A DNA stretch of 64,000 nt from Hamiltosporidium tvaerminnensis FI-OER-3-3. Taxonomy: Eukaryota; Fungi; Microsporidia. A model generated the notes under the pieces. It was not told where the DNA came from. It searched no databases and saw only the letters and a program-made list of their open reading frames with translations. The position numbers and the translations under genes are program-made. This document shows positions 1-39,420 of this stretch, piece by piece; the stretch's first letter is position 1; each line of letters begins with the position of its first letter. Location: assembly GCA_022605425.2 (NCBI GenBank), contig CM061246.1, positions 1,178,001-1,242,000 of the forward strand, read 5' to 3'.

Positions 1-72
1 AATGATCTCACACCAGTTTCACACTCATTGCCAAGCAGAAAGTTTTTTATGTGGTTATCCTCCCTCCACTGC
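1..72 (-). mobile_element. Terminal fragment of a second copy of the ~745-bp SINE-like element (rest lies outside the window)
   Basis: 1-70 (aatgatctcacac...gtggttatcctccctccact) aligns to 20902-20973 and stops at about the same boundary. Confidence 0.7.
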
Positions 73-82
73 TTTTCATGTA

Positions 83-3000
83 ATTATTTAATAAAATTCT
101 GGGTTAACAAATTTTTCTTTTTAAATAATTTTTTCCACCATTTCAACCACTTCTATCTCTTCCTCCAACTCCAACTCTTCATTTGTATTAGTTGTTGGTT
201 CCTTTGCTGTGGTTATGCCATCCAAAATAAGGGGTAAAATATTTTTTGTATTTTCCGTTTTAACATCATCTTCCTCGTTGTCTACTTGCTTTAAAGGGGG
301 TATTGGTTGTTTATGCATCTCAGCTCCTAAGATAACACTTAATGATGCTCTCTCCCAGCTCTCCTCGGCATTTGGACCAGACTCAAGTCTTCTTCGTCGA
401 TCAAAAGAAATTGTTTCGACTGTCTTCTTGAGTACTATGGATTGTATATATCCCTCTACATTCATAGGTATTTGCAGTCTCTTAACATACGTCTTATGGT
501 ATTTTGTCACAATACCGTCCCAGGTCATCACATAAGGAATTATCTCTACGTTGCATTTATAAATAAGACCTAACTCATTTGCTAATAGGTCATACTTCCT
601 AAGCTTCTCTGTTTCAACTATTTGAAGAGAGTCTTGAGATGTGATTCCTACTTCAATGAGGGTTATCCTATTCTGTTTCTTGTCCAAAATAAATATATCT
701 GGTCTGTTACACCGGATCTTGACATCAGTTTTTATTCAGGTGTCCACTCTTATCTCTGCATATTCGTTATCAAGAATTTCTTGAACTGAGTGGCTTCTAT
801 TCGTTTCGAAGACTTAAACTTATATTTATTCAGCAAGAGTAAATGTATACATCGTACCACTTCATTATGTCGTCTAGTATAGTCATGACCAAGCATTTTT
901 TCACATCTCGTTGCTAAGTGATCAACAGTTTTCCTAGACTGGTTGCAGTGTTGACACATACCTTCTGCACCCCAGAAAACATTTCTATCCTGGATATAAC
1001 AGAACACTGCTTCATCACGTGGTCTTACACTTCCTTTCTTTAACCATCTTGAGGATTCATTTACACTTACCAGCTCGTTATTTCTAGCGCTATATAACTT
1101 TGAATGTAGTTTTCGGTTTTTGATTTCGTTATATAGGTTAGCTAGTTGAGCTTCTTCCAATTTCTTTTTTGTGACATCCTCTTCCAACCCGTATTTTATT
1201 TTTAAAAGTTTTTAATTAGTGAAAGGTGGGTTTTATTATTATTCTCAACCTTTAGGATTGCTGCTCTTCTGGTCGATGTATCTTTATGTTTTTCCAGACA
1301 ATCCAAGAGTTGCAAAAGCCTATGTTCGCTTTTGAACTCGACACTATGTAAACTTCTTCCAAGTTCTTTACGTGGAAGGTACAGACGCTCTTTAAATCCT
1401 GGGCGAAGATGTATCTTGTTCTTTACTAAAACTGCACGCACCGCCTCATCTAACTTAGAGAAGTCAGCCGGTTCAAGTCGGAGTACACCTATATGATAGT
1501 TTAGTAAAGAAATTGCATGTTGATTAATGGCTTAAAATAAATTTCTTGCATTTAATCTCGTGCGACAAAGTCTTTCTACTCGTGCTATAAGTTTGGTCTG
1601 TACTTCCTCAAACGACTTACTTGTTGGAATTCTTCTGCTATCTTCTATAATTCCAAGGTATTTATAAACACCTATTCCTTAAAGAAGAGTAGCAGTATCT
1701 TCACAACATGGATCATTAGTGGTTGACTTCTCTTTGTTAATCTCCAATCCTATATTATTCATAAACTTTTTAACCTCCTCTGTCATTTCTTCCAATGTTT
1801 GTCCATCTTCGGCAAGGAGCTTAAGATCATCAATAAACAAGAGATGATTAGTCGCTGTGATTCTGCATCTGTCTTTATTGTCACTTTTGTGTATTTCTCA
1901 TTAAGCTTTCGGCTCAATGGATCCATACACAACACAAACAATAATGGTGACAAACTATCTCCTTGCAGCATCCCTCTATCAATCTTCTTACTCATGATTT
2001 TTTCAGGCCCTACTGATATATCAATTTTCCATTTTGATATAATTACCTTAAAAAATTTCAGGATCCAATCAGGTAAATCAAGGTTTTCAATGCATTGAGT
2101 CAAATAAGCATTATCTATTGAATCATAAGCTTTTTTACATCAATCCACGTTGCCTTAAGATTGTTTCCATACTCTTTATTAATAGCAACATTTAGCAGGG
2201 CCTGCTCCTTCGCTCCTTGCACACCTCTCACTGCACCCAATTGATTATCTGCTAGTAACCCTCGCCTTTCTACCTCAAGCTGAACAACTTTTGTAACACA
2301 CTTTGTCGTCAGCTTGTAAAGGTTTGACATACAAGTTATTGGCCTATAGTCGGAGCCTTTTTGTGGTACGCTTTTTGGAATGAGATACGTTAGCCCATGA
2401 TAAAACCAATTAGCTTGTGTGTTCCTTCAAAACATATGGCTTTCACAATATCATAAAGATACTTGTGAAGAGTCGTAAGTTTCTTGATATAAAAATTGTA
2501 GATCCCATCAATTCCGGCAGCTTTCCAGTTAGGAAGCCAATTGATAATATCTACAAATTCATTAAGTGAAGGAAACGTGGCCTGGTGAGTATCCGGCACG
2601 AAAGGTATCAGATACTCATCATACGTAACTATTTCATTATTTTTGTTCCACATTGTGGACCAAAAACTTACAATTTCGTCACGATTAACCACATGCTCGG
2701 ATTCCACACGCTCAGACAGGCCACGATAATATCTACCTCGGAACAGCTCAAACATACGATTCTCTTTTCGGAATTTCTTCCTACTTTCGTACATCGTAAG
2801 TTTTTTTTCGTAAACAGTTATCAGCTCATTCTTCTTAACTAAAGCCTCCGATAGATCATTTGTTTTGTTTAGGTCTAAATTAAACTCTCGCATAATTTTT
2901 TTAAGACTTTTAGTTTGAGAAGAGGAGAGTTCTTCCCGTCTACGTGCTTTCTCGAGGATATCTTTTTTAAGTTTTAACACTGAAATTTTACTCTCAATGC

Positions 3001-3866
3001 TTTCTTTCCACGCTGATCTTGGCCTCTCTTTACGTGTTTCATCGTCATAACATACCTGTGCTGTCTGGATAATTCGGGCAACGTCTGTTATCGTCATAGG
3101 TACATGAGAGTCAGCATATTCACCGACTATTCGATTAATAAGATCAAGAACTGTAGTGTCAACCAATTCATTTGGAAGCTTTCGAGTTCGGACTACTACT
3201 TTTCCGATTTCCTCCTCAGATATTTTTTTGATATTACTCAAGTATTTTTCTCTCAGGCTTATAAATCAAGTAGTATCAGTCAAAGAACATGGCTCGGCGA
3301 GACAAGTGGCGATTCGACGTCGCTCTCCATTCTCTTCCTGCCTAATTTCCTCTTCCGTCTTATTGTGTGCCATTCTTTTTAGCACATCGATAGTTTCGGT
3401 ACAGGAGAACTTCTCATTATAGTAGCTCTGTATCTCTTTCCATCCATTTCTAGGCATTCGGTCAAACCTTGTTTGTACTGCAAAAAGAACACATCGAATA
3501 AATTCTTGACGCTCGGCCTCTATAGATCTGAGTATGGATCGGAGTACAACGAGCCTTTCGGAAATAGGTATGGTACAAAGGTTTGGCCACTAGCAGCTAT
3601 ATCTGGCCTAGGGGTCACGGTGCTTGAATGCATAGGTTAGATGGCGGTTATGGTGTTAAGCAAGCATACCTTTGTGTTTGTGTTTGCTTCGCTTGGTGGT
3701 ATAGAGATGTTATTTATGATGGTGGATGGTGTGTATGAGCTTGGCTGTGGAATTCCCTGGTCGTTTTTACACTCTCTAATTACCCCATCCACTTCACTTG
3801 CCCTGTTTGCAGCCTTTATTATTTTTTCTTTTTGTTTTCGCTGCCTACATATTTTCTTATACCCAT
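83..3866 (-). mobile_element. Near full-length non-LTR retrotransposon, RLE type (R4/Dong-like); single ORF broken by frameshifts and stops
   Basis: ORF fragments in order: start MGIRKYVGSE (ATG 3866), ...NWLPNWKAAGIDGIY, RT motifs (QLGAVRG, WIDVKK, GMLQGDSLSPLLF), CCHC knuckle CQHCNQSRKTVDHLATRC...RRHNEVV, and PD-(D/E)xK endonuclease (RPDIFILDK...LIEVGIT...EKLRKY). The 3' end gttaacccagaattttattaaataa is shared with other copies. Confidence 0.92.
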
Positions 3867-24432: not shown

Positions 24433-25735
24433 CAACAGGTTGATTCTGCCTGACGAGGATGCTTGTCTCTGGGATTAAGCCATGCAAGTCTGGTGAAGCG
24501 AAAGTGGAACTGCGAACGGCTCAGTAGAACGGTGATTATTTAATCGTGTAGGAAGGATAACCGCGGGAAACTGTGGCTAATAACACGAGTAAGACGCCGA
24601 CCCATCAGTTTTATCGTACGGTAAGGGCGTACGATGGCTTTAACGGGTACGGGGGATCAGGGTTTGATTCCGGAGAGGGAGCCTGAGAAACGGCTACCAG
24701 GTCTAAGGACAGCAGCAGGCGCGAAACTTGCCCAATTGGAGAGAGGCAGTTATGAGACGTATATTTTGTAACCGGGGTAGAATACCGGTGATTGACTGGA
24801 GGGCAAGTCTGGTGCCAGCAGCCGCGGTAATTCCAGCTCCAGGAGTGTCATAGTGCATTGCTGCATTTAAAAGGTCCGTAGTCAGTGTTGACAGGGATGC
24901 TAGAAGACACTTTCTTCATGGAGTGTATTGGCATTCTAGGTTAGCATGTAGGAGCGGAAGAGGGCGACTGTATTGCGTAGCGAGAGGTGAAAGTTGACGA
25001 CCTACGTAGGACAAACCGAAGCGAAAGCTGTCGTCCAGTACGTTTCCGGTGATCAAGGACGTAAGCCGGAGGAGCAAAGGTGATTAGAGACCCCTGTAGT
25101 TCCGGCCGTAAACTATGCCAACTGGGTGTTACGTAGTGGTACCCACGAGAAATCAAGTATATGGGCTATGGGGATAGTACGATCGCAAGATTGAAACTTG
25201 AAGAAATTGACGGAAGGACACCACCAGGAGTGGAGTGTGCGGCTTAATTTGACTCAACGCGGGACAACTTACCAGGGCCAGTTGTATGACGAATCTTTGA
25301 TGAGTACGACTAAGTGGTGCATGGCCGTTCACAACATGTGAGGTGACTTTTAGGTTTATTGCTGTAATGTGTGAGACCCTCAGCTACGGCGACTGGGGAC
25401 TATAAGTTTCAGGAAGGAGGGGGCTATAACAGGTCTGTGATGCCCTTAGATGTTCTGGGCTGCACGCGCACTACAATGTTATTTCTAGGTATATTGTAAA
25501 GATAAAGGATAACTCGGTTGGGATTGCGTTCTGTAATGGACGCATGAACCAGGAATTCCTAGTAGTCGCGTGTCACTAACGGGCGACGACTGCGTCCCTG
25601 TTCTTTGTACACACCGCCCGTCGTTATCTAAGATGGTGCTATGTTCGAAGAGGGTTTTCCTTCTGAGGACGTAGGATTAGATTGGATACAAGTCGTAACA
25701 AGGTTGCTGTAGGAGAACCTGCAGCAGGATCAGTG
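24433..25735 (+). rRNA. Microsporidian small-subunit rRNA (~1.3 kb)
   Basis: caggttgattctgcctgac at the 5' end, gtgccagcagccgcggtaa, gtacacaccgcccgtc, and aagtcgtaacaagg...ggatca at the 3' end. Confidence 0.98.
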
Positions 25736-25767: not shown

Positions 25768-27442
25768 AAACTCATACAAGGGATCACTTGGCTCCGTATC
25801 CGAGGAAGGCCGGAATAGTTTCCGAGAACTAAGGCCGAACGGCATTTGTAAATGCCTGACTACCCCCTGGACTTAAGCATATTATTAAGGGGAGGAACAA
25901 AAACTAACTAGGATTTCTGTAGTAGCGGCGAGCGAACAAGAAATAGCCCCGAATGTAAGCCTCCGGGCATTGTTAAGATCGTCGTAACGAATTACCGGGA
26001 CAGGTAAGCCATAGAGGGTGATAGCCCCGTAGTGACGAGTAATGGGCAGAGTAGGGTTGCTTGGTAATGCAGCCTGAAGAGGTGGTGGGTTCCATCTAAG
26101 GCTAAATATGAGCGGAGACCGATAGCGTAATAGTACAGCGATGGAAAGGTGAAAAGCTAAAAAGTGCAAAGACGTGAAATTGTATTGAGTATCCTGATAA
26201 CAGGACCCGTCTTGAAACACGGACCAAGGAGTGCATCTGCATAGCAAGTTAAAGGGGGGTTTCCTTTAAGCGTAGCGAAAGCAGATATAGCTGTTCGGAT
26301 GCGACCCGAAGGGCTGTGAACTACACCTGGCCAGGTTGAAGCCATTCGAAAGGATGGTGGAGGACCTAAACTTGTTCTGACGCGCAAATCGATGGTTTGA
26401 GCTGGGTGTAGGGGCGAAAGACCAATCGAACAGCCGGGTAGCTGGTTCCCATCGAAATGTCTCTCAGGACAGCAGACACAAGTTACTTAGTATTATGCGG
26501 TAGAGGAACGGCGGGATGAAAGGGGAGCAATCTCCACATACCGACGAACTGCGAACGTGTACGTGTTATTCTTGTACTAAAGAATAGCGATTATATATGT
26601 GTCTAGTGGGCGCGTTCTGGTAAGCAGGACGTGCGAAGAGGGATCAACCTGACGTACTGATAAGGGGCCTAATCTGGTTTTTCTTAAGGCCGTAGATGAA
26701 TTGTGACAGTAGGGCGGTGGCCATGGAGGTTGGCATCCGGTAAGAAACGTGTTGCAACGTACCTACCGAATTCATGTGCGCCGAAAATGGACGGTACAAG
26801 GCCAGACCCGATGCAGTACTTATAGGTAGATGGGCGTGGTGTATGTGCAGAAGGTTTACCGTGAGGTAAAGTGGAGCATACACTAGTGCTGATCTTGGTG
26901 GTAGTAGTTACAATTCGTGTGTGAATCGCGAAGGCTTCAGGAGAAGGGTTCTTCTAAGACTTCATAAGGAGAAGGTTAGCCGGTCCTGAGATCTCGACAG
27001 GGAATCGGGTTGATATTCCCGAGCCATCTAGGTATTTGGCAACAGTAAATATGGTGTTTACGTCTTAGGCACGACAACAAGGAGGTACCCATTCCTTGTA
27101 GCAGTACTGTATGTAGCGTGTTGTACAGAGCAATACAGACATATGCAATTGTCTTAGCTGGGATCCGTGAAAAAATACCTTTATGACCTAGATGACCGTA
27201 CCGACCGCAGCAGGGCTCCGTACGGTGTATACCGGAAGCGATAGGACAAACGTTAGTTAGGGAATTCGGCAAATTAGATCCGTAACCTCGGGAAAAGGAT
27301 TAGCTCTAAGGAATTAGAACTTTTAGTTACGGGGAATCCGACTGTTTAATAAAAACATAGCTTTGTGGTGGTGTAGTACGTGGACACAAAGTGAATTCTG
27401 CCCAGTGCCCAGCTGTTAAGACAGGTCGGGCTGTATACGCAG

Positions 27443-27496
<54 letters not shown>

Positions 27497-27593
27497 CCTA
27501 ATTAGTGACGCGCACGAAAGGAGCAACGAGATTCCCACTGTCCCGACTAACAACCTGCGAACCCACGAGCCAAGGGAACGGTCTTGGCTATGC

Positions 27594-27630
<37 letters not shown>

Positions 27631-27906
27631 GTGACGCCGGGGTCTTGTGCAGCTGTAGCAAGGTGGGGCAACTGAAAGACCACTAGCTGTGCAAGCGACC
27701 CGTATTTGTCAGATGGGGAGTTTGACTGGGGCGGTACATCTGCTAGACTACAACGCAGATGGCCTAAGGGTGGCTAACTTCGGAGAGAAACCGAGGGTGT
27801 AGTCCAAGGGCAAAAGCCACCCTGACGTATTACTACACGGTAATACGAGGGGAAACCCAGGCCTAGCGATCCCATTGCTTACAGAGCATCTAGCAATGGG
27901 TGACGT

Positions 27907-27938
<32 letters not shown>

Positions 27939-28042
27939 AGCCGAGCGACCCTAGCGACGCTGCTTTTTGATTCTTCGATGTCGGCTCTTCCTATCATGGT
28001 GCAGCAGAAGGCACCTAGTGTTGGATTGTTCACCCACTAACA

Positions 28043-28080
<38 letters not shown>

Positions 28081-28326
28081 TAGTTTTACACTACTGCTAC
28101 GGTACTAAGGGAGCAGATGCTAGTACGAAAGGAACGAATCTGCAGGACCTCTTGTCGTGCTTATATCTGGTAAGGTACGGGCTAAGCAACGTCCTGGCAC
28201 GGAAGAGCTGAAGGCCTCTAAGCTTCAACGTGGCCCTACTGTACTATCTGGCATGAAGACGACGTGCTTGGGTGCTGCAGCTGTAATCCACAAGATCGCG
28301 AGTGGATGAGGCTAGCAAGCACTCAT
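25768..28326 (+). rRNA. Microsporidian large-subunit rRNA with fused 5.8S
   Basis: 5.8S-like start ggatcacttggctc with no ITS2; acccgtcttgaaacacggacc; ttaaggtagccaaatgcctcg; PTC gatgtcggctcttcc; sarcin-ricin loop agtacgaaaggaac; terminal helix gggtgct...agcactc closes at ~28324. Confidence 0.97.
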
Positions 28327-28384
28327 GACGAGAGATGATCACCACCTCCACGTGGTTCTCGTTGGGTAACGCCAAGAGTGATCA
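28327..28384 (+). ncRNA. Minimal HDV-like self-cleaving ribozyme directly 3' of the LSU rRNA
   Basis: P1 GACGAGA/TCTCGTT (G1-U wobble); P2 TGATCAC(C)/(GA)GTGATCA; P3 ACC/GGT; L3 TCCACGT; P1.1 CC/GG; vestigial P4 GTAAC; J4/2 G-C(28372)-CAA. Confidence 0.85.
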
Positions 28385-28963
28385 ACAACAAAAGCATGTA
28401 AAATTAAAAAGAATAAAACTCAAAAAAAAGTAAATAAAAAAATGATTTTAAATAAAATAATAAAATTGGATAAATACAACGAAAGAAACATTTTAGCACC
28501 TTACAAAAAGGATCTAAGCAAAAAAACGCAAATGCTTTTTTTACATAATCTATTTGTGTGACATTTAAATAATTTCCACTAATTCTACTTATAAGAAGGC
28601 ACATACCAGATATGTTTTAAAATATCACTTTTTAAAGATTAGAGTCTTTATGTATGCTTGGATCTCATTACCAATTTGATTTTTAAATACATTTCTTCCT
28701 TTATATAAGCAAAAACTATTTTTCAAAAGACAGCATCGAGATTTCTAATTGAGAAAAATTTAGTATCATACCTATTATTTTTTTCATATACTTCAAAGTT
28801 TTCAAAATTTTTTAAATATAAGACTTGTACTGTAATATTCTGCTTACCTGCATATATTATTTTAAAGAAACGCCAACTTTTTAATATTCACAAATTGTTT
28901 TTCATTAATAAATTAAAGGAATGTTCAAATAACCATAATTTTTTACTTTAACGAATTATATAT

Positions 28964-29195
28964 CAGTAATGCCTCAAAGAAGACAGATCCTTACTTAATG
29001 GTTTGCAATAAAACCAGGTTGTGTTAACTTAAAATGTGTATGTGTGGGATAAAGGGAGACGTGTGACCTTCTAGAACCGAAGTCGGATTGCGGATATGGT
29101 GGCTATACATAGCCGGGTCGGTTTATAAGGAATTTTGTGTGTTGTAGATTTGGCTGATCTTAAGGAAAATAAACCGAATTTTATTTATTTATTTA
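28964..29195 (+). mobile_element. ~230-bp 3' end of an APE-type LINE with (TATT)n tail and ~16-bp TSD
   Basis: TTAACGAATTATATAT at 28948-28963 and 29196-29211; ends aataaaccgaattt(tatt)n; matches 54192-54421, whose extension aligns to LINE ORF2. Confidence 0.85.
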
Positions 29196-32100
29196 TTAAC
29201 GAATTATATATATTTCCATTAATTTCTAGGTTCTAGAAAGATTGAAAAAGATAACGGCCTAATACATTACATATTTAAATATCCAAACCTATTAAAATAC
29301 CATATATGACATCAAAATGTAATTTTATAAAAATATAAACAATCATAGAATTACTGTATTCATGTTTAGAATATAAAAATGGCCGAAGATCTTAACCTTT
29401 TAATCATTTGAATCATAAATTCAAAAAAAAAGAATATATTTGTCAATCTTAGATAACATATAAATAAAAAGCAAAGAATTTAATGACATAAATGGGTTAT
29501 AAAAACCATGTATGCACATTATAGAAAAAATTTCTTAACTAGCGTCTCTTTGTTCATAAAATGATAGATCTTGCGCAAAAATACTTTAAAGGATATATAA
29601 ATAATTTTTAAAAAAAAACTTTATGAGATGAATAAACAAAATACTTCGTGGCTTTATTTATTTGACATTAAATAAAAATTGAAATTTTTATATAGCGTTA
29701 TAATTTATATTTGCTAAGTTTTGAATTATGAATCTAATTACATAGAAATGAAAAAGCAAAATATAGAGGCATATTTGCCAATAATAATTTACTCAAAAAA
29801 AATAATGGTAGATTTAATGATTCGAATGTTTAAAATAGATAGACAAAGCTCATTTATAAAATTCTAAAATTTAAATTTTTAGATCATAAATCAGTATCAA
29901 GCATAAATTTCTGTTTGGTAATGATTAAAAAAATTTTTTGTTAACCATTGCAAAATTGGATTTTCAAGTTATAACTTAACGGATCTAGTATTAAGAAAAT
30001 TTAGAACAACAAATATAATTTTCTCGGTCAACCAAATAAATATATTAAAATAAAAGAATGAATTAAGTGAAATTTTTGTAGTATAAAAAATAATAGTTTT
30101 TTGGTACTACAGAGTTAACAAATTACACTAAAAGAAAGATATACTAGAAATATGGAAACAATTCAATAGATTGAAAAAGAAAATAAAACTATAAAATAGT
30201 ATAATAAGCGAAATGATAAACTTCTAATGATTGAAATTTAAGTTATAATGGTTCATGACTTCTATTTTTATTAAAAAAATTAAATTTAAATATGAATTTT
30301 AGGTTAGTACAATATTAAAAATTCTGAAAATATACAATAATTGGATGGTTATACCCTTTTGGCAATAGAAAAAAACCTATTAGAATATCTTTAGAGAACT
30401 ATAGCAAACTGCCAACATGATTTGTCACAAGGAATGCATATTTTTCTAAAATATAATGGCTTTTAAATTAATTTTAGAATAATATATTTTATAATGTTAT
30501 ATTATATCATTTAAAACTCTTAAAAATCATTATATTTATATGAATGTTATAATAATTAATGCCAAAATGATAAAATAATATTAAGAGATATTAACATTTG
30601 TTTTAAAATAATTATCATATAGTAATATGACTATAAATTAATCGAAAAATATTTTTTTTGTGTAATTAACGGAAAAATTCATAAATATAAACGAAATAAA
30701 AAAGACTTTACAACATATATATTTATTAAATCGCGTCACGGTATATGAAAAGCAATTGTTTTAATCGTTTCACAACAGCTAACAACTTATTAAGTAAACC
30801 ATAATCTCATATTCCACTACAATGGGATTTAAGTCGTTTTGTGAATGTTTCAAAACAAAGAAGGTTTTCCAATCAAAATAGTTGTTAAACCATATCCAAC
30901 CTTCCTCTTTTTTTAACCTCGATGTGATTTATTAATGTTAATTCTGAAAAATTCTGCACGAATAAAATAATACACACAATTTTTAATCTATATCTTTAAT
31001 TTTTATTTGATATTTATACTAAAACTTGAATAAAACTAGTTATAATTACAATTTTTAAAAAAAATAAAAATCCACATGCATAGGGAATATGAAGTACAAG
31101 CTAAATAAACCGTAAATATATACAAACCAGAATTATATAAAATATTTCAATTTAAATATATTAGAAATAAACGTCTTTAACTATAAAATGAATGTTTCTT
31201 TTCTTAAATTTATCATTAGCTGAAGTATTTAAATAATAGGTTTTTGAAATCATAATGGAATCGTTTATTCTATAGAAAACTGCAATATTTAATTAAAACT
31301 GATAAGTAAAATTACGTTTTTGTAATTTATATTAGTTTTCTATTTACTTCCATTGAAGCTTACAATTAAATGACTATGATGTGTAGAACCCTATTAAAAA
31401 AAACCTACAGAGATTGTAAGTATATTATAAAACTAAATTTCTTGTTTCGGTTTGAATAAAAATAATTATAAATAATTTAAGAAGAGGTTAGTTAATGTCT
31501 ATTATATTATATCCAAGAGAAAAAAAAATTTTGTTTCATCAAAATAATAAATACGGAAACAATTTTTTCAGAATAAAATAAAGGTATAAAAAATTTAAAA
31601 CAATAAAGAATTAGAAGAACATTAACAATTTATTAAAATTTATCAAAATATTACATGGTCTAAAACAAAAAAATTTTATTTCGTTAATATATAATAATTT
31701 TTAACTTCAACTAGCAGTAAAGAAGTAAATCACTGACTGAGATTTTATAAATTAGAATCGAGTTTTCTTCTTTAAAAAGTAAAAATAATATATATTTTAT
31801 CTTTAATTTAAAAAGTTTTTGTGATCTAAATTTCCTTTAGAATACCATTTTACGAATATTTAATACATATTTCAAACATAGCATAAATAAAAAATAACAA
31901 AAAATCATACAGATGACTTCTATGCGCCTTGTATTAATCAGATATCAGATCGAAAAAGACGGATATTCCGAGATATTAAGAACAAAAAACAATTCAAAAT
32001 ATACAACTTTAAAATTAATAATTTTATAAACAAGAAAAAATATTTTAAATTGATTTTCGTATATTAAGACTTCTAAGGCTGTTAATAAATAATCAAATAT

Positions 32101-34305
32101 TGTAAAATTCATCATGGTGTAATTTATGTTGTTCTAACGTAATGGTATACATAAATATCACAATTTATAAGCTTTAAAGCCGTATTTCAGGATGAGAATA
32201 TTACTTTACCCTTCTCAAATATTTAAAAATGAACATTTTAATCAAAGCAAAACAACTGTCTAGCCTATGATTAAGCCATAAGATGGAATATTTTTAGTTT
32301 AATATAACTACATTCAAACTTTATTTATGTTACATTCATTATATTCACTATATATTCGAAATTTTTTTATAAAATTAAAATATAAGAGTAATAAAAAGAT
32401 AGCGTTATTTTATCTATAAATTACATAGATATCATCAAAATATATAAAAACAAAATATCTTATAAAAAAAAGCTTCAAGTAGAAATTGAAGATGCTGAAT
32501 AGTCAGATAGAAAAATTCTTGTAGATAATAATCCTACTTTTACTTATATACGAAATATACAATCGTGTATATATTATACTACATTTTAATAAAATGTCTG
32601 AACACATTTATAATTTAATACATTTGGTAATTGATTATATAAAAGTTATTTGATCTTATTAAAATTTCTTTTTAAAAAAATTAATAATTTTGTGAGATTA
32701 TAATGTAATTTTTGGTTTTTTACATGTTAGGTTCTATGTGCATTTAAAAATAACAAGTCGACCGAGTTTCTTTATATAGTACTTGTCATCGGAACGAGCA
32801 GATCTGATTTGTAAAAATGGCTTTAAACCAGATATATTCTCATGAGTGTAAGTTGCACAAGTAATTAAATCTAACATTGTTAAATTAAAAAAGAAGACGT
32901 GTGATACCTACTCTATTATGCTATTATCTCAAAATTTAATCCCTTCATGTTCGATATAATTCTTTCATAGAACAAGATCAAAATATTTAATTTATATTGT
33001 GAGCAGTCTCGCATTTATTAACCAATATCATGTGTTATATCATATTTAAGCATTATAGTTTATAATCTAACCAAAGGGCTTTATAATTTTCTTACATTAC
33101 ATGGATTTTTAGTTAATTTATTGCTTGGCTTTTCTTAAGTTCCAAAAAAGAAATATACTATTAATACGTTAAAGTAAAAAAGATTTTTCTGCTCCATTCA
33201 TTTTTTGGTCTTTTATGTGATATTTTAAGCGAGACTTATGATAGAATAATCATTTTGAAACAGCGTCCAGGAATATTCTTTAACTGAATGCTTGTTCTTA
33301 AAAAGCCGCAAATATAAGTTTATAGTAAACGTGAGAATGGTGTAAAACAACGTATCATAAACGCCTTTTTATTGTATTATTTTTCTCTGCATAAATTTTT
33401 TCTGTAATACCAGAATTTTTTTGATTTTCAACTTCAAAGAAATTCAGATTATTTTAAAGATATATGATTACTAAGATAATGTAGGTCAGTGTTATTAACT
33501 ATTATCTCATGCATATAATATGTATATTATTGAGATATACTATAAATCAATTCCATCGTTTTGTAATTTTTAAAATGAAACTCTCTTATATCCTTAATGA
33601 GATTCAGAAAACTATAAGGATTTTCTTTAAAAAATTTAGTTTTCTTTAGATATTTGTTAATCCTAAAACCAGTTTAAATAACCCAGATAATTTAAAAATT
33701 TGTTTTTTTAATGGTGTATAAGAAAGATTTATATCTTACAGTCCTAAATGTTTTTTATAATTTTGACTAGTTCTAATCTTTTCGAAACGCAGTAATTGTT
33801 AAAACAGATTTGAAAAACATTTTTACGACTAACATTTTTCTTTAAATACGTTTTTTACTACAAAAATATAATAGATTTATATTTTAAATTCTTGCATTTT
33901 ATACAATCATCTTTAGGGTTATATATCTGTTAAATGTTTATTATATTTGTAAGTAATATATTTATTAGATGGAATATAAATACAAGAATAGAAAGAAAAG
34001 CACCAAGCACTTAATAAAGTGAGCAAAGAAATGTACAAAAAAATTTAAGCAAAATTTAGATGGGAAATATAGATAGGCATACTTGATATTTTTCTCCATA
34101 TATTCTGTATTTAGATATAATAAACTAAAAATATTTTTAGTATAATAAGAATAAAAAAGAAAAATGCAAGTATACGATCAGAAGAAATAATAAAATAAGA
34201 AAATTTTAAAATTTTCTTTTGAAAATAAATCCGGGAGTAAAAATATATTTATAAATCGAGAAATAGAAACCAAATGTATGACGACTATTGTGTTGTAAGG
34301 CGCCC

Positions 34306-35957
34306 ATGGGCAAAAGAAAAATATCGGGAGCAGTTGAAAATCGCAAAAAATCAAGATGTGAGAATACGGGTGTGAAGAGTAGGAATTTCGACGACTTTGT
34401 TTCCAGCTCATCGAGGACTAGCCACCCTCGAGTTGTGAGCCCAATCGACTGTTTTTTTTCGGCATCTTCGAAACAGAAGGAGTGTGCGGCAGCCACGCAC
34501 AAGGAGAGTAAAAAGTGTACAGATAATAGGGATGTAAGGAGTTTTTTTGGGACAAGCATGCCAAAGCACACACGGGATGTGCCGCTGACCAGCCAGCGAA
34601 GTTTCCCGGAGGAGAAAGAGACACAGACTTTGTCTGTTCTTCATGCATTGCTTCTAAGAAAATAACACTCCTTGAAAAAAGAGTGGAAAAATTAGAAGAA
34701 GAGGAAAAGAGATATAAAAAAACTCTTATGTTGGCAAAAACCAACTCGATTGCTTTAGAGGTACACTTTAAAGAAATTGAGAAGCTACGTAAAGTACCTA
34801 AAAGTTCGCGTAGGTGCCGTACTCACAAGTGCGTGATAACGGCAGTAGCACCTGTTTCCTCGGTTAGGCTAAAGGCAGGAGCCAGAGACCCTCAGGCTGA
34901 TCCAGCAGTCAGTGAGTTAGTCTGCAACGCTGCAGAACTAACAGAGAAACCACTCGAGCAGAATTTGGTGGTAAATGAGGCGAAATCTCAGTCTTTCGGG
35001 CCAACTTTGTCCGCACGATATGCAATGGCTAAAGCTCGGTCTTTGGATAAACAGATAGTGTTACGGACTGACAGTTCTACTGATCTGACTGCAAATGCTG
35101 TTGACTCTCTTGCTGTTGGAGTCTGCCCAGCGGAAGTGCTGATCTGCATAGCAGCAGAATCTCAAAACTTACAAATCGAACGTGCAATGAATGTAAGTCA
35201 TCAAGGGGCGAGGCTCGTTGAATGTGGTACGGGCAATACCACACTGCCTCCGATAGCAACTCCTCGTTCTATCGAAAAAAAGTTACCTGAAAAGACATCC
35301 GTAAGTGCTTCAGGAAAAGGTCTTAAGGATAATAAAAAGGAATTATCCAAGAGCAAAGCAACTGGTAACCCAGCCAGTAAACCGAGAGCCGTCAAATTGC
35401 AGACTGCTAAAAAGCCTTCCTTCGATCGTACTAAGGCACCTTCGAAGCAGAGTAGAGGGAAACTTAACTTAAACAGAGCACAGTGTGAGGATGTTGTGCA
35501 AGGCAAATCACCATTTGTCTTGAATAGGTTTGTGCTTCTTTACTTAGATGGAGTTAAAGTGAACAAACCCGCTTATTTAAGAGCAGTCTTAGAGAACGGG
35601 GGCGTTAAATCTTACTACGTAAAGCATGTAGGCTTCACTAAGGAAGGCCTGTTAGAGTTGCTTGTTAATGCTAACAGTATGGACAAGGTTAAAGCCATTT
35701 TTACAGAATTTAAAAATGTTAAGACGTTTGATAACTATCTTAACAGAGGCAGTCTCGAAGAGATTGGTGAGCGGTTATCTGACCTTAAGCGCAGACTCTC
35801 ATGGGTCGAGCGATTTATAGATAACCCGCCGGTTAGGAGGTTCCTTAGCATTCTGAAGCATATTTCAGCTCAGAATGCCTCTCAAGAAGCCTCGAAAATC
35901 TTCTATGGACTAGAAGATGTGGTACTTGAGGAGCCAAAGAGCTTCTCTAGCCTATAG
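34306..35957 (+). pseudogene. LINE ORF1 (gag-like; coiled coil, low-complexity middle, RRM-like C-terminus) with an apparent frameshift near 34650-34680
   Basis: cgcccATG MGKRKISG... followed by the 424-aa ORF 34683-35957, upstream of the APE domain. Confidence 0.7.
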
Positions 35958-38900
35958 TCAGGACTGTCTGAACTGTTGACACCTGCCAACAGATAAAGCC
36001 GTGCAAAGCAAGCCCTGCGGTATACTTTGTGTGGGGTGTACCGCATAGGCATCGTAGTGTTTTTGCTGAAACACTACAGGCGAAAGGTTCCAAAGGTACG
36101 TCTGTCAAGCGAGTTATCAAGCGAGATGGACGTAGACGACTTGATGGGACTGTTGAGAGTGGGATAGACCCGGAAACAGTGTAAGCTGTGAGTAGGAAAC
36201 ATCTTGGGTACTGCAAAACCCATACACTAGGGAGAAAAAAGTCTGTCGGAATTTGCACGGAATCGTATGGTAATCTTAGATTACTTACGCTAAATGTAAA
36301 TTCCTTTGGATCAAAACGAGAGGAGGTTCTAATGCTAACCGGTAAACTCCACCCAGACATTTTATGTCTCCAAGAGACATTACGCTACACAGAGAGTTCT
36401 CGGCACGTTATTCCGGGATACGAGGTGATTGAAAGCTTTGCAAACAAGGAGGAAAAAGATGGTAGAGGACTGGTTTTAGCTGTGCGTTGTGTTAGATCTT
36501 ACGCTATCGTCAGTTGAAGTACATCCTAACTTATTGGCTGGCAGTGTTTGTGGCAAAAAAGCGTCTGGTGGCTGGTTTAAATTGCTTGTTGTTAACCTGT
36601 ACATTCCTCCGAAATGTTCACTATACGGCAACAGAGCGGAAACGCTCGAAGCTCTAGGATCTTTTCTTGTTAGCGAAAACAAGAAAAACGGTTTAGATGA
36701 TATTCTAGTCATAGGCGAGCGGAATATGACTCAAGAAGAGGCTGCTAGGTTCCTGGCTGTCAAAAACCCTATAGCCCTAATAAATGGTTATTCGAAGCAC
36801 TGCGAGCTACACGTGCAGCAGCACACAGTGCGAATAGATGCATTGACCACTGCCTGTTTCTGAAAAGAGAGTGGACGGAGGTAGTTAAAGTGCACAGGAA
36901 ATGGGATATATCGGATCACCTTTCTGTAACTGTTGACGTTAGGGTGGATACGCTCATCCGAGCCGTACACAAGAAAAAGCTCTTCTTACGCTTGTTTGTT
37001 GAGCAGTTACTTGCCGAAAAGCTTATAAGCTGTCCGACCAAGAACAGTTTCGGTCACACCCCTAATCATAGGATTATGTGGCAAAAACTGTTAAAGAAGA
37101 GAAAAAAGCTAGGTCTTTATAGGTACTTTTTCAGATGAAATAGTTTTTTTTGCCTCGGAAGCTTAAAAAAACTATTGACGATAGACGGAGAGTTGCTTTC
37201 GAAATGAAAACTGGCCGAGCTTTCCGAATGCCTAAGCTGACCTCAAACGAAAGTGTGAGGAAATGAAGCGTCTATATAAGCGGCAGCTGAGAATAAAGTG
37301 GGCACGAAAAGGTATTGCGGATGCAACAAACCGTTGCATGAGAGACGTGTGACAGTAGACCAGAAGGTCTGCTGGAATACCCGAAATCTCGGCTGCCAAT
37401 CGCACGGTTTGGATGAAAAAGGCCAAATTGCTTCGGATGAGCAGACAGTGTTGCAGGTCTGGTACACATCCATCGTTCCTTAGCAACAATGAATCATGAG
37501 TTACAGAGCAAAGACACTCAATCCGAGTGTCTTATTGAGGATAACAACGCTCATTATAATGATTTGATTGCTTGGCAAGAGGTTATTTCAGCGCTGCACG
37601 AGTCAGCAAAAAAAAGCATGTGGTTTAGATGAGGTACCAGTAGAAGCGTACAAAGCTCTACTAATGGATTCTCATGGCGTAAGTCTGATGGCACAGCACA
37701 TTTTACATGTGCTGAATGAGGCCTGGACAAATAGAATACCTGACAGCTGGAGAGTGTCAGTCATAGTACCGGTACCGAATAAAGGTGATTTATGAAAGCC
37801 TGGAAACTACCGTGGAATTTGTCTGATAAACACTCTTCTTAAACTGCTGTGTAAGGTTGTGGAACGCCGAATGCGTTTGTATGTGAGAATAATAACCTCT
37901 TGTGCCGGGAACAAGCTGGTTTTCGTACTCGAGAGGAATGTGTTGCTCAGGTGGCAACTCTTTTAGAAATTCAAAGGAGAAGTTTATTCGAGGTAGAGAG
38001 ACTGTTTGCCTATTTATCGATTTCGAAAAGGCTTACGATAGAGTTCCTCATGATCAATCCTTTTGAAACCAAAAGAGCAAGGCTTTTCTGGAAAACTCCT
38101 AAGATTCCTTAAAGATCTGTACACTGATCTACAGGTTGGTGTCAAAGTAGGCGATAAAACAACAAGCCTATTCCCATATAATATCGGTCTTCGCCAAGGC
38201 TGTCCGCTATCACCTCTGTTATTCGATCTCTATATCGATGACATCTTTAGAGGTGTTAATGGTATAGTATGCGAGGGTCTTAATTATAGGGTTCCGGGTC
38301 TGTTGTTTGCCGATGACATGTCCTGTTCGTTGAATTTGTGACTGCCGTACAACTCAGTACGGATAAAGTGATGAGTTGGTGTGAGACCTGAGAGATGCGT
38401 ATTAATATAGATAAGTGTGGGTTGTTACTTCCCCCGGTTCTTACAGTTAACGTAATGATAGGTAAATCAGCAGTCCTGTTTGTCAAACCTAAAAATACTC
38501 AGGCATTGTGTTGGCCCGCACGTTTTCTCTAAAAGAATTGATTCTTGGGAGAAAAAAGGCTGTGTTTCCGGTCCGGAAAAATGCCATGCCATTCCTCGGC
38601 AGGTCAGAGTTCCGCTTTACTTTAAAGTTCTGATCATAAAGCATGCATTATACCAATCGTAATGCATGGGAGCGAATTGTGTGGAATGAGCAAGGTCAGA
38701 ATAGTAATTGTAGTTTGCGGCGTTACACGTTCTTTGGCAGCAGCTTTTGGATGTCGAGAGAATTTTGCCCAGCTGGCAGCTTTCAGAGAGTGTGACATCC
38801 AGCCTTTATATGAAAAGGCAGCTATGTCACGTGTAAGAGGCTTCTTGAAATGACAAGAAAGCAGAACGATCATACGGGACTTGCTAAATGGTAAGTTTAC

Positions 38901-39420
38901 AGCGAGAAAGAGAACGTGGGTTACTCAAACCCGAATCTGGATGAAAGCTTATACTGGAAGTCTTTTACCGGGTTTGAGTAACAAAAGTAGTGGCCTTCTA
39001 ATCAAAGAGGCTATTGTTAAAAGGCAAGGCCGAGCTGATAAGTCAGTTATAAGTGGCTTACGTAGGCTTTTTGGTCTTAATAGTGGGTATAAGTGGATCT
39101 ACGCAGAACTAAATAACAGGGTGTTAGCTAGCAGTATTAAGATGCTGCGTAATTTAGAATAGGACTGGTGAAATTTAGTCCGCAACTGGCAGCTTTAGGA
39201 AGATTACCGAATAGGTATAGGGAACGCTGTCCATGTTGCGAAAAACCAGTCCGAGAAACTTTGTGCCATCTAGTGTTCATGTGTAAGAAGTGGAAAGTAG
39301 AGCGATAGATGTTTACAGCTCAGGTTACGCGAAAAGTTGTAAAATGTTTGAAAACTTCTGATGCTGTAGGGAATTCAAGGCATCAAGATACTCTTGGAAG
39401 GGAAATGGCAAGCTGCCGCT
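34306..39420 (+). mobile_element. APE-type LINE (ORF1 plus frameshifted ORF2 with APE, RT and CCHC); 3' end truncated
   Basis: APE motifs LLTLNVNS..DILCLQET..NLYIPP..SDH; RT motifs KACGLDEVP, PVPNKGD, QAGFR, GLRQGCPLSPLLF, LFADD; knuckle CPCCEKPVRETLCHLVFMC (~39228-39284). Confidence 0.93.

What the first reader, a model, noticed from the sequence alone, without database searches (positions are those of the whole stretch)
28327..28384. Minimal HDV-like ribozyme positioned to cut the 3' end of the LSU rRNA
Seen in sequence: the last LSU helix (gggtgct...agcactc) closes at ~28324, and the next 58 nt fold into the full nested double pseudoknot of HDV-class ribozymes. P1 is GACGAGA(28327-33)/UCUCGUU(28357-63) with a G1-U wobble, and J1/2 is GA. 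P2 is UGAUCAC-C/G-A-GUGAUCA and P3 is ACC/GGU. L3 UCCACGU fits the UCCNCGY consensus and P1.1 is CC/GG. P4 is reduced to GUAAC, and J4/2 is G-C28372-CAA. Established: HDV-like ribozymes cleave 5' of G1, leaving a 2',3'-cyclic phosphate upstream. They occur at 5' ends of R2/RTE retrotransposons, and minimal 'theta' versions sit 3' of phage tRNAs. In yeast the pre-rRNA 3' ETS is cut by the protein RNase III Rnt1. Inference: cleavage at 28326|28327 would release the pre-rRNA co-transcriptionally within ~2 nt of the last LSU helix, i.e. RNA-catalysed rRNA 3'-end formation (and possibly a Pol I termination entry site) in a reduced parasite. I am not aware of this having been described, but cannot search.
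Basis: partly seen in the sequence, partly recalled or inferred. Interest (0 to 1): 0.95.

Follow-up and report, generated by a model that had tools for sequence, protein, structure and literature searches.

The report
Self-cleaving ribozyme ends microsporidian LSU rRNA
Every ribosomal RNA gene unit of this microsporidian parasite is followed, two bases after the large-subunit rRNA, by a textbook minimal HDV-like self-cleaving ribozyme, so the rRNA's 3' end is probably cut by RNA rather than by a protein; this role has not been described for this ribozyme class.

Summary
Window 28327-28385 (+) forms every element of a P4-less HDV-like ribozyme: P1 7 bp with a G1-U wobble, P2 7 bp, P3 3 bp, P1.1 2 bp, catalytic C28372.

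- **Model scores.** Rfam HDV models match end to end but below threshold, because P4 is missing. A model built from 30 independent metagenomic minimal ribozymes scores it 62.5 bits (E about 2e-14).
- **Distribution.** The 21.6-Mb genome has 15 copies and nothing else comparable. Ten sit directly after all ten LSU 3' ends. Five head a roughly 700-nt SINE-like retroposon inserted 0.5-1.7 kb downstream.
- **In vivo cleavage.** Two independent retroposon insertions have perfect target-site duplications abutting G1. The template RNA therefore began at the predicted cleavage site.
- **Conservation.** Among the ten rDNA units, identity is LSU-like through the ribozyme and collapses immediately after 28385.
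- **Protein alternative.** No Rnt1-type RNase III was found, only a Dicer-like gene.

Best reading (about 0.6): ribozyme-catalysed release of the LSU 3' end. The retroposon probably borrowed the same module, or donated it.

I obtained no RNA-read or cross-species evidence. Other first-stage readers flagged the same motif at other rDNA loci of this genome. I found no paper describing it.

The parts
25840..28326 (+). LSU rRNA gene of the left rDNA unit. The 5.8S-like part starts somewhat upstream, at about 25770. The terminal helix 28270-28276/28318-28324 is followed by AU.
   Evidence: Rfam LSU_rRNA_eukarya 25840-28328, 1737.8 bits, model 1-3401; sequence read.
28327..28385 (+). Minimal (P4-less) HDV-like ribozyme, LSU-adjacent copy 1. 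Predicted cleavage between U28326 and G28327; catalytic C28372.
   Evidence: All helices verified. Rfam HDV models match full length. Custom model R1 62.5 bits, E about 2e-14.
55949..56007 (-). Identical ribozyme directly after the second, convergent LSU gene (LSU at 56006-58773 by Rfam).
   Evidence: R1 62.5 bits.
55475..55533 (-). Third ribozyme copy, differing by 2 substitutions (C to T in the P4 closing pair, giving G-U, and GCCAA to GCUAA). It forms the exact 5' end of a retroposon.
   Evidence: Rfam RF02682 27.3 bits; R1 65 bits.
54818..55533 (-). Non-autonomous, SINE-like retroposon of about 700 nt: ribozyme head, unique GC-richer body, LINE-type 3' tail ending in a (TTTA)n repeat. Sister copies on contigs C10 and C17 carry 14-15 bp target-site duplications abutting G1.
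   Evidence: The empty site of the C17 insertion is at window 29328.
54230..54815 (-). 5'-truncated 3' end of the LINE family that supplies the retroposon tail.
   Evidence: Shared tail sequence and shared ORF fragments with the LINE at 34000-39400.
28965..29197 (+). 5'-truncated LINE tail in the spacer of the left unit, flanked by a 14-bp target-site duplication (28951-28964 and 29198-29211).
   Evidence: Sequence read.
34000..39400 (+). Degenerate LINE between the two convergent rDNA units, with an AP-endonuclease fragment and a reverse transcriptase. No ribozyme at its 5' end.
   Evidence: GC island; ORF fragments; Pfam Exo_endo_phos E=1.7e-4 and RVT_1 E=4.2e-8; no R1 hit there.
28386..28800 (+). 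A-rich 3' spacer shared by all ten units but divergent between them. Conservation falls immediately after the ribozyme.
   Evidence: Variable columns: 8/300 in the last 300 nt of LSU, 1/59 in the ribozyme (a single substitution), 27/61 in the next 59 nt.

Best explanation
The 59-nt element is a functional minimal HDV-like self-cleaving ribozyme that belongs to every rDNA transcription unit of this microsporidian. The genome matches published Hamiltosporidium tvaerminnensis in size, contig number and rDNA layout.

Proposed mechanism:
1. Pol I transcribes past the LSU.
2. The nested double pseudoknot folds as soon as about 60 nt have emerged.
3. C28372 catalyses attack of the 2'-OH of U28326 on the U28326/G28327 phosphate.
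4. The LSU is released ending in ...CUCAU with a 2',3'-cyclic phosphate, 2 nt beyond its last helix.
5. The polymerase-bound spacer RNA is left with a 5'-OH. It could be phosphorylated by the Clp1-family kinase and degraded by the single XRN-type exonuclease, which would help termination between the two convergent units.

The ribozyme thus does the job that RNase III (Rnt1) does in yeast. The same module, as a discrete RNA bounded by G1 and the end of P2, became the 5' head of a LINE-dependent retroposon in the spacer. There it frees the element from read-through transcripts.

Shown: fold, class membership by model, copy distribution, conservation boundary, retroposon 5' ends at G1.
Inferred: catalysis at the LSU copy, the mature LSU end, the termination step, and the direction of module transfer.
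For: - **Fold and class.** All helices and the catalytic C are present. Rfam HDV models match full length. R1, built from 30 metagenomic minimal ribozymes, scores 62.5 bits.
- **The class is real.** The core pattern retrieved at least 120 metagenomic loci. Of 124 matches, 108 have a perfect 7-bp P1 with 89 different P1 sequences, against 5% in decoys. 81 unique ones also have P2 of at least 6 bp. 31 sit right after tRNAs, which is the theta ribozyme arrangement (PMC10879173).
- **Distribution.** 10 of 10 LSU 3' ends carry it. There are no other copies in 21.6 Mb except the 5 retroposon heads.
- **Selection.** Variable columns are 1/59 in the ribozyme (a single substitution) against 27/61 in the next 59 nt, and the break falls exactly after 28385. 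The four kinds of substitution seen among the 15 copies all fall in P4, J4/2 position 3 or the spacer. They reproduce variants common in the natural class: GUAAC in 27 sequences, GUAAU in 26, AUAAC in 6; GCUAA in 65, GCCAA in 16.
- **In vivo cleavage at G1.** The C10 and C17 retroposon insertions have perfect 14-15 bp target-site duplications directly abutting G1, and an empty site is preserved in the window.
- **LSU end.** The eukaryotic LSU model ends at 28328.
- **Protein alternative.** The only RNase III domains lie in one 1245-aa two-domain, Dicer-like ORF. A CLP1_P kinase and an XRN_N gene are present.
- **Downstream RNA.** The spacer after the ribozyme is poorly conserved, so the selected product is more likely the upstream LSU than a downstream RNA.
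Against: - There are no RNA-level data.
- rDNA units are homogenised by gene conversion, so identity among the ten copies is not purely selection.
- The same module heads a retroelement, so it may have arrived as, or mainly serve, selfish DNA.
- The Rfam gathering scores are not reached.
- R1's training set was picked with a core pattern taken from this very sequence, so its score is partly circular for the core. It is not circular for spacing, P1 or P3.
- The absence of Rnt1 rests on a six-frame Pfam scan of one assembly.
Confidence: 0.6

Rival explanations
1. Retroelement-serving ribozyme. The LSU-adjacent copy is a captured or ancestral 5' head of the spacer retroposon/LINE system. Its selected role is to free downstream retroelement RNA from Pol I read-through transcripts, as in R2 and its SIDE derivatives. 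The LSU 3' end is made independently by protein nucleases, and cleavage next to the LSU is incidental.
For: - Five near-identical copies head a LINE-tailed retroposon with target-site duplications.
- The region between the convergent rDNA units is packed with this LINE family (PMC12449221).
- All full-length retroposon copies lie within 2 kb downstream of an LSU and in sense orientation.
- HDV-like ribozymes at the 5' ends of promoter-less non-LTR elements are the established eukaryotic use (PMC3774820, PMC3414825).
Against: - The LSU-adjacent copies are not followed by retroposon body sequence; homology stops at the end of P2.
- No duplication of the LSU-end sequence exists downstream.
- Target-primed reverse transcription yields 5'-truncated copies, not copies consisting of the 5' end only.
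- The spacer downstream is poorly conserved, while the ribozyme is conserved like rRNA in 10 of 10 units.
- Wherever it came from, a cut 2 nt after the LSU necessarily detaches the LSU.
Confidence: 0.2
2. Neutral passenger. The ribozyme is, or was, active but has no selected role. It sits inside the rDNA gene-conversion tract and is kept identical by homogenisation alone.
For: LSU and ribozyme are almost identical in all ten units while the spacers fall into several haplotypes not matched by locus, which shows concerted evolution at work.
Against: - A conversion-tract boundary coinciding to the base with the end of P2 in all haplotypes is unlikely without constraint.
- The substitutions that do occur avoid all paired and catalytic positions.
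Confidence: 0.1
3. Not a working ribozyme. Either the motif is a chance look-alike, or the stretch is part of the mature LSU. An archaeal or bacterial type 3' tail (H99/H1 strands) would run about 17 nt into it.
For: - The Rfam archaeal LSU model extends its alignment to 28345.
- Rfam HDV scores are below gathering.
Against: - That extension has non-canonical pairs and no 5' partner.
- The eukaryotic model ends at 28328.
- R1 scores 62.5 bits, and only these 15 sites in 21.6 Mb score comparably.
- The retroposed copies begin at G1.
Confidence: 0.05

Closest known systems
Theta ribozymes and other minimal (P4-less) HDV-like ribozymes (Riccitelli 2014; Kienbeck et al. 2024, PMC10879173)
   Same: - Same architecture and almost the same core: 7-bp P1 starting with G, short A-rich J1/2, 7-8 bp P2, P3 ACC/GGU, L3 UCCNCGU, GG, GUAAY mini-P4, GCYAA, total length 54-62 nt.
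- Same logic of use: the ribozyme is placed directly 3' of a stable structured RNA so that cleavage makes that RNA's 3' end. 31 of 124 metagenomic matches sit right after a tRNA.
   Different: - The host is a eukaryote (a microsporidian), not a gut phage.
- The upstream RNA is the LSU rRNA in a Pol I unit, not a tRNA.
- The theta paper reports about 99% of hits in phages and almost none in the eukaryotic genomes it searched.
R2 retrotransposon 5' HDV-like ribozyme and its non-autonomous SIDE derivatives (PMC3774820, PMC3414825)
   Same: - A ribozyme embedded in the rDNA transcription unit and processed out of a Pol I co-transcript.
- The downstream copies here head a non-autonomous element that starts at the cleavage site and ends in the partner LINE's 3' tail.
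   Different: - R2 inserts inside the 28S gene and disrupts it. R2 ribozymes have a P4 and define the element's 5' end only.
- Here the LSU-adjacent copy lies after an intact LSU, is present in all units, and is followed by spacer rather than element sequence.
- The partner LINE is AP-endonuclease type, not R2 type.
Rnt1 (RNase III) cleavage of the 3' ETS with Rat1 torpedo termination in yeast (established knowledge, from memory)
   Same: A co-transcriptional cut just downstream of the LSU that releases pre-rRNA and creates an entry point for a 5'-3' exonuclease.
   Different: - RNA catalyst instead of a protein.
- The cut is at +3 rather than about +14 to +49.
- The products are a 2',3'-cyclic phosphate and a 5'-OH instead of a 3'-OH and a 5'-phosphate, so a kinase step would be needed before a torpedo.
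- No Rnt1-type gene was found here.

Membership tests
HDV-like (delta-like) self-cleaving ribozymes | Nested double pseudoknot: P1, P1.1, P2, P3 (P4 optional) | tested here: met
   P1 7 bp, P2 7 bp, P3 3 bp, P1.1 2 bp; all pairs are standard.
HDV-like (delta-like) self-cleaving ribozymes | Catalytic cytosine at the first position of J4/2, and a G1-U wobble closing P1 at the cleavage site | tested here: met
   C28372 sits in G-C-C-A-A. G28327 pairs with U28363. The C is invariant in all 15 genomic copies and in all 81 metagenomic relatives, though the search pattern required it.
HDV-like (delta-like) self-cleaving ribozymes | Score at or above the Rfam gathering threshold (RF00094, RF02682, RF01787) | tested here: not met
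   26.4 bits against 50, 24.9 against 44, 13.6 against 37. The alignments are end to end, and the deficit comes from the deleted P4. A P4-less model, R1, gives 62.5 bits.
HDV-like (delta-like) self-cleaving ribozymes | Site-specific self-cleavage 5' of G1, abolished by mutating the catalytic C to U | not testable with these tools
   Indirect support only: retroposed copies with target-site duplications begin exactly at G1.
Theta ribozymes (minimal drz 3' of phage tRNAs) | Minimal P4-less motif with the conserved core | tested here: met
   Gapless match to a model built from 30 such sequences.
Theta ribozymes (minimal drz 3' of phage tRNAs) | Located immediately 3' of a tRNA in a bacteriophage genome | tested here: not met
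   The upstream gene is a microsporidian LSU rRNA. The genome is a 21.6-Mb eukaryote.
5' processing ribozymes of non-LTR retrotransposons (R2, RTE, L1Tc type) | The ribozyme forms the 5' terminus of an element that is bounded by target-site duplications and ends in a LINE 3' tail | tested here: met
   Met for the downstream copies: window 55533-54818 (-) and the C10 and C17 copies.
5' processing ribozymes of non-LTR retrotransposons (R2, RTE, L1Tc type) | The same criterion applied to the LSU-adjacent copy at 28327-28385 | tested here: not met
   No element body follows it, and homology to the retroposon stops at the end of P2. There is no duplication of the LSU-end sequence downstream.

The most novel reading that the evidence does not exclude
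In this microsporidian lineage, RNA catalysis has replaced RNase III in forming the 3' end of the large-subunit rRNA, and probably in starting Pol I termination between convergent rDNA units. The excised 59-nt ribozyme RNA was then picked up by a LINE reverse transcriptase through template switching, creating a SINE-like retroposon whose 'promoter substitute' is a host rRNA-processing ribozyme. That would be host-to-transposon flow of a catalytic RNA.
Probability: 0.35. Interest if true: 0.88.

Novelty: new variant of a known kind. Interest (0 to 1): 0.78.

Why it matters
In the eukaryotes studied so far, the 3' end of pre-rRNA is made by protein nucleases. A natural case where a small self-cleaving ribozyme does it, in every rDNA unit, would:

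- give HDV-like ribozymes a new core housekeeping role;
- extend the theta ribozyme principle (3'-end formation of a stable RNA) from phage tRNAs to eukaryotic rRNA;
- be the first such ribozyme reported in Microsporidia;
- show a further way reduced parasites simplify ribosome biogenesis.

It also gives a tidy natural example of a ribozyme module shared between a host gene and a retroposon. The experiment is simple: in vitro cleavage, plus mapping of a cyclic-phosphate 3' end.

Tried and rejected
- **Relatives through spurious ORFs.** Homology searches with the 50-aa ORF inside the LSU 3' region and with the 79-aa ORF that starts inside the retroposon ribozyme found no candidates.
- **Metagenome scan.** It returned many minimal ribozymes but none next to rDNA, judged by blastn against the window's rDNA.
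- **Retroposon-insert idea for the LSU copy.** No target-site duplication of the LSU-end sequence was found.
- **Retroposon body.** There is no Rfam family for it and no Pfam domain in its ORF.
- **The 424-aa ORF at 34683-35957.** No Pfam domain.
- **An H99/H1-type extension of the LSU into the ribozyme.** The archaeal-model alignment there is non-canonical, and I found no complementary 5' strand at the LSU 5' end.
- **MAFFT alignment of all 81 metagenomic ribozymes (A1).** It was too ragged in P1/P2 for column-wise covariation, so I used a length-matched subset (A2) and script-based pairing counts instead.
- **Las1 search.** Uninformative, because the controls also gave no hits.

Full report
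**Setting**

The window holds two convergent (tail-to-tail) microsporidian rDNA units. On the + strand, SSU is at 24433-25735 and LSU at 25840-28328. On the - strand, SSU is at 58878-60180 and LSU at 56006-58773.

The window is G000:C1:1178001-1242000 of a 21.64-Mb, 17-contig assembly. The assembly has ten LSU 3' ends in five convergent pairs. [quoted passage not shown] Neither paper mentions a ribozyme.

| Element | Coordinates | Note |
|---|---|---|
| P1 | 28327-33 / 28357-63 | 7 bp, G1-U wobble |
| J1/2 | 28334-35 | GA |
| P2 | 28336-42 / 28378-84 | 7 bp |
| P3 | 28344-46 / 28354-56 | 3 bp |
| L3 | 28347-53 | UCCACGU |
| P1.1 | 28348-49 / 28364-65 | CC with GG |
| P4 | 28366-70 | reduced to GUAAC |
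| J4/2 | 28371-75 | GCCAA, catalytic C28372 |

The last LSU helix closes at 28324, and only A-U separates it from G1.

Three Rfam HDV-type models align end to end on exactly this stretch (RF02682 E=0.012; RF00094 E=0.072). They score below gathering because the P4 positions are deleted.

**It belongs to a populous natural class**

- A core pattern with P1 left free retrieved at least 120 metagenomic loci.
- Of 124 matches, 108 have a perfect 7-bp P1 just upstream, with 89 different P1 sequences, against 5% for decoy pairings.
- 81 unique sequences also have a P2 of at least 6 bp and lengths of 54-62 nt.
- 31 sit 15-19 nt after the 3' end of a tRNA, including amber-suppressor-type tRNAs. These are the theta ribozymes of gut phages (PMC10879173).
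- A covariance model built from 30 of these sequences, with none from this genome (A2, R1), scores the window copies 62.5, 62.5 and 65 bits (E about 1e-14). The alignments are gapless and the next hit is 9.6 bits.
- Caveat: the training set was selected with a core pattern taken from the query. The core match is therefore partly circular; the spacing and the P1/P3 pairing are not.

**Distribution in the genome**

Both the Rfam model and R1 find exactly 15 copies in 21.6 Mb and nothing else comparable.

- Ten copies follow all ten LSU 3' ends. They are identical except for one G-to-A change at the first P4 base in one unit.
- Five copies lie 0.47-1.65 kb further downstream, in the same orientation. 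Each has two substitutions.

**Conservation boundary**

In an alignment of the ten 3' flanks, the numbers of variable columns are:

| Region | Variable columns |
|---|---|
| Last 300 nt of LSU | 8 / 300 |
| Ribozyme | 1 / 59 (single substitution) |
| Next 59 nt | 27 / 61 |

The spacer splits into several haplotypes starting at the base after 28385. All four kinds of substitution among the 15 copies fall in P4, the third base of J4/2, or the J4/2-P2 spacer. The variants produced (GUAAU, AUAAC, GCUAA) are all common in the metagenomic class. This is the pattern expected for a constrained, working ribozyme, although rDNA homogenisation also contributes.

**The downstream copies are retroposon heads, which shows cleavage in vivo**

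The copy at 55533-55475 (-) is followed by a unique GC-richer body and a 3' tail ending in a (TTTA)n repeat. That tail is shared with a LINE family. A degenerate member of the family, with AP-endonuclease and RT fragments, lies at about 34000-39400. 5'-truncated tails lie at 54815-54230 (-) and at 28965-29197 (+), the latter with its own 14-bp target-site duplication.

The sister copies on C10 and C17 are flanked by perfect 14-bp and 15-bp target-site duplications. In each, the upstream repeat abuts G1 directly. The uninterrupted C17 target site is still present in the window.

Independent insertions that all begin at G1 mean that the RNA template began at G1. So a ribozyme differing by 2 nt from the LSU copy cuts at the predicted bond in the cell. 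All full-length copies lie within 2 kb downstream of an LSU and in sense orientation. That fits dependence on Pol I read-through.

**Relation between the two kinds of copy**

Homology between the LSU-adjacent copies and the retroposon copies is confined to the ribozyme itself, from G1 to one base past P2.

- The LSU copies are followed by A-rich spacer, not by retroposon body.
- No duplication of the LSU-end sequence occurs downstream.
- Target-primed reverse transcription produces 5'-truncated fragments, not fragments consisting of the 5' end only.

I therefore think it more likely that the module moved from the rDNA to the retroposon. One route is template switching onto an excised, exonuclease-resistant ribozyme RNA, as in the U6-L1 chimeras. 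This mechanism is inference from memory and is untested. The reverse direction cannot be excluded.

**Protein alternatives and follow-on steps**

- The only RNase III domains in the assembly are two in one 1245-aa ORF, which is Dicer-like. No single-domain Rnt1-type gene was found.
- One clear Clp1-family P-loop kinase and one XRN-type exonuclease are present. A kinase-plus-torpedo route for the 5'-OH spacer RNA is therefore possible but unproven.
- The Las1 search was uninformative.

**What is missing**

Two attempts through spurious ORFs found nothing. None of the metagenomic ribozymes lies next to rDNA.
- Literature searches found no report of an HDV-like or other self-cleaving ribozyme in microsporidia or at an rRNA 3' end.
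- Other first-stage readers of this scan flagged the same motif at other rDNA loci of this genome, the third copy, and the conservation boundary. I had found the third copy before seeing those notes.

**Verdict**

| Claim | Probability |
|---|---|
| Real minimal HDV-like ribozyme | about 0.9 |
| It cuts pre-rRNA at 28326/28327 and thereby forms or initiates the LSU 3' end | about 0.6 |
| Main rival: it chiefly serves the spacer retroelements | about 0.2 |

This is a new variant of a known kind: a known ribozyme class in a new host group and a new housekeeping role.

Noticed in passing
window 56300-57290 (- strand LSU copy): The second LSU copy is 279 nt longer than the first. It carries a block of about 1 kb that is only 52-84% identical to the first copy, with large insertions, while the rest of the gene is 98-100% identical. 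Another reader called this block 'animal-type 28S'. Possible explanations are host-read contamination during polishing, a chimera, or a true variant. I did not examine its origin.
   Followed up: partly
window 54818-55475 (-); C10:347408-348058; C17:608734-609375: The retroposon body (about 400 nt, GC-richer, hairpin-dense) has no Rfam or Pfam match. It occurs only in rDNA-flanking regions. An older copy on C14 (88% identical) is 5'-truncated and lacks the ribozyme.
   Followed up: partly
five loci: C1 586090/625644, C1 1206300/1233939, C10 345705/373286, C14 888643/915109, C17 607873/637545: All rDNA units are in convergent pairs 26-40 kb apart, enclosing AT-rich DNA filled with one LINE family. 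The spacer haplotypes of the two arms of a pair can differ: the window's left arm matches the C17 arms, and its right arm matches one C14 arm. Read-through from both sides would make complementary RNA in a genome that keeps a Dicer-like gene.
   Followed up: no
metagenomic loci L022, L057, L120: Several metagenomic contigs carry two or three minimal HDV-like ribozymes spaced about 0.9-1.3 kb apart and not next to tRNAs. About 75% of the 124 matches have no adjacent tRNA, and their contexts remain unexamined.
   Followed up: no
window 34683-35957 (+): A 424-aa open frame at the 5' side of the degenerate LINE has no Pfam domain. It may be an ORF1-like protein of this LINE family.
   Followed up: partly
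window 25771-25776 and 28321-28326: The hexamer ACTCAT occurs both near the likely 5' end of the 5.8S-like start of the LSU and as the last six bases before the ribozyme cleavage site. This may be coincidence.
   Followed up: no
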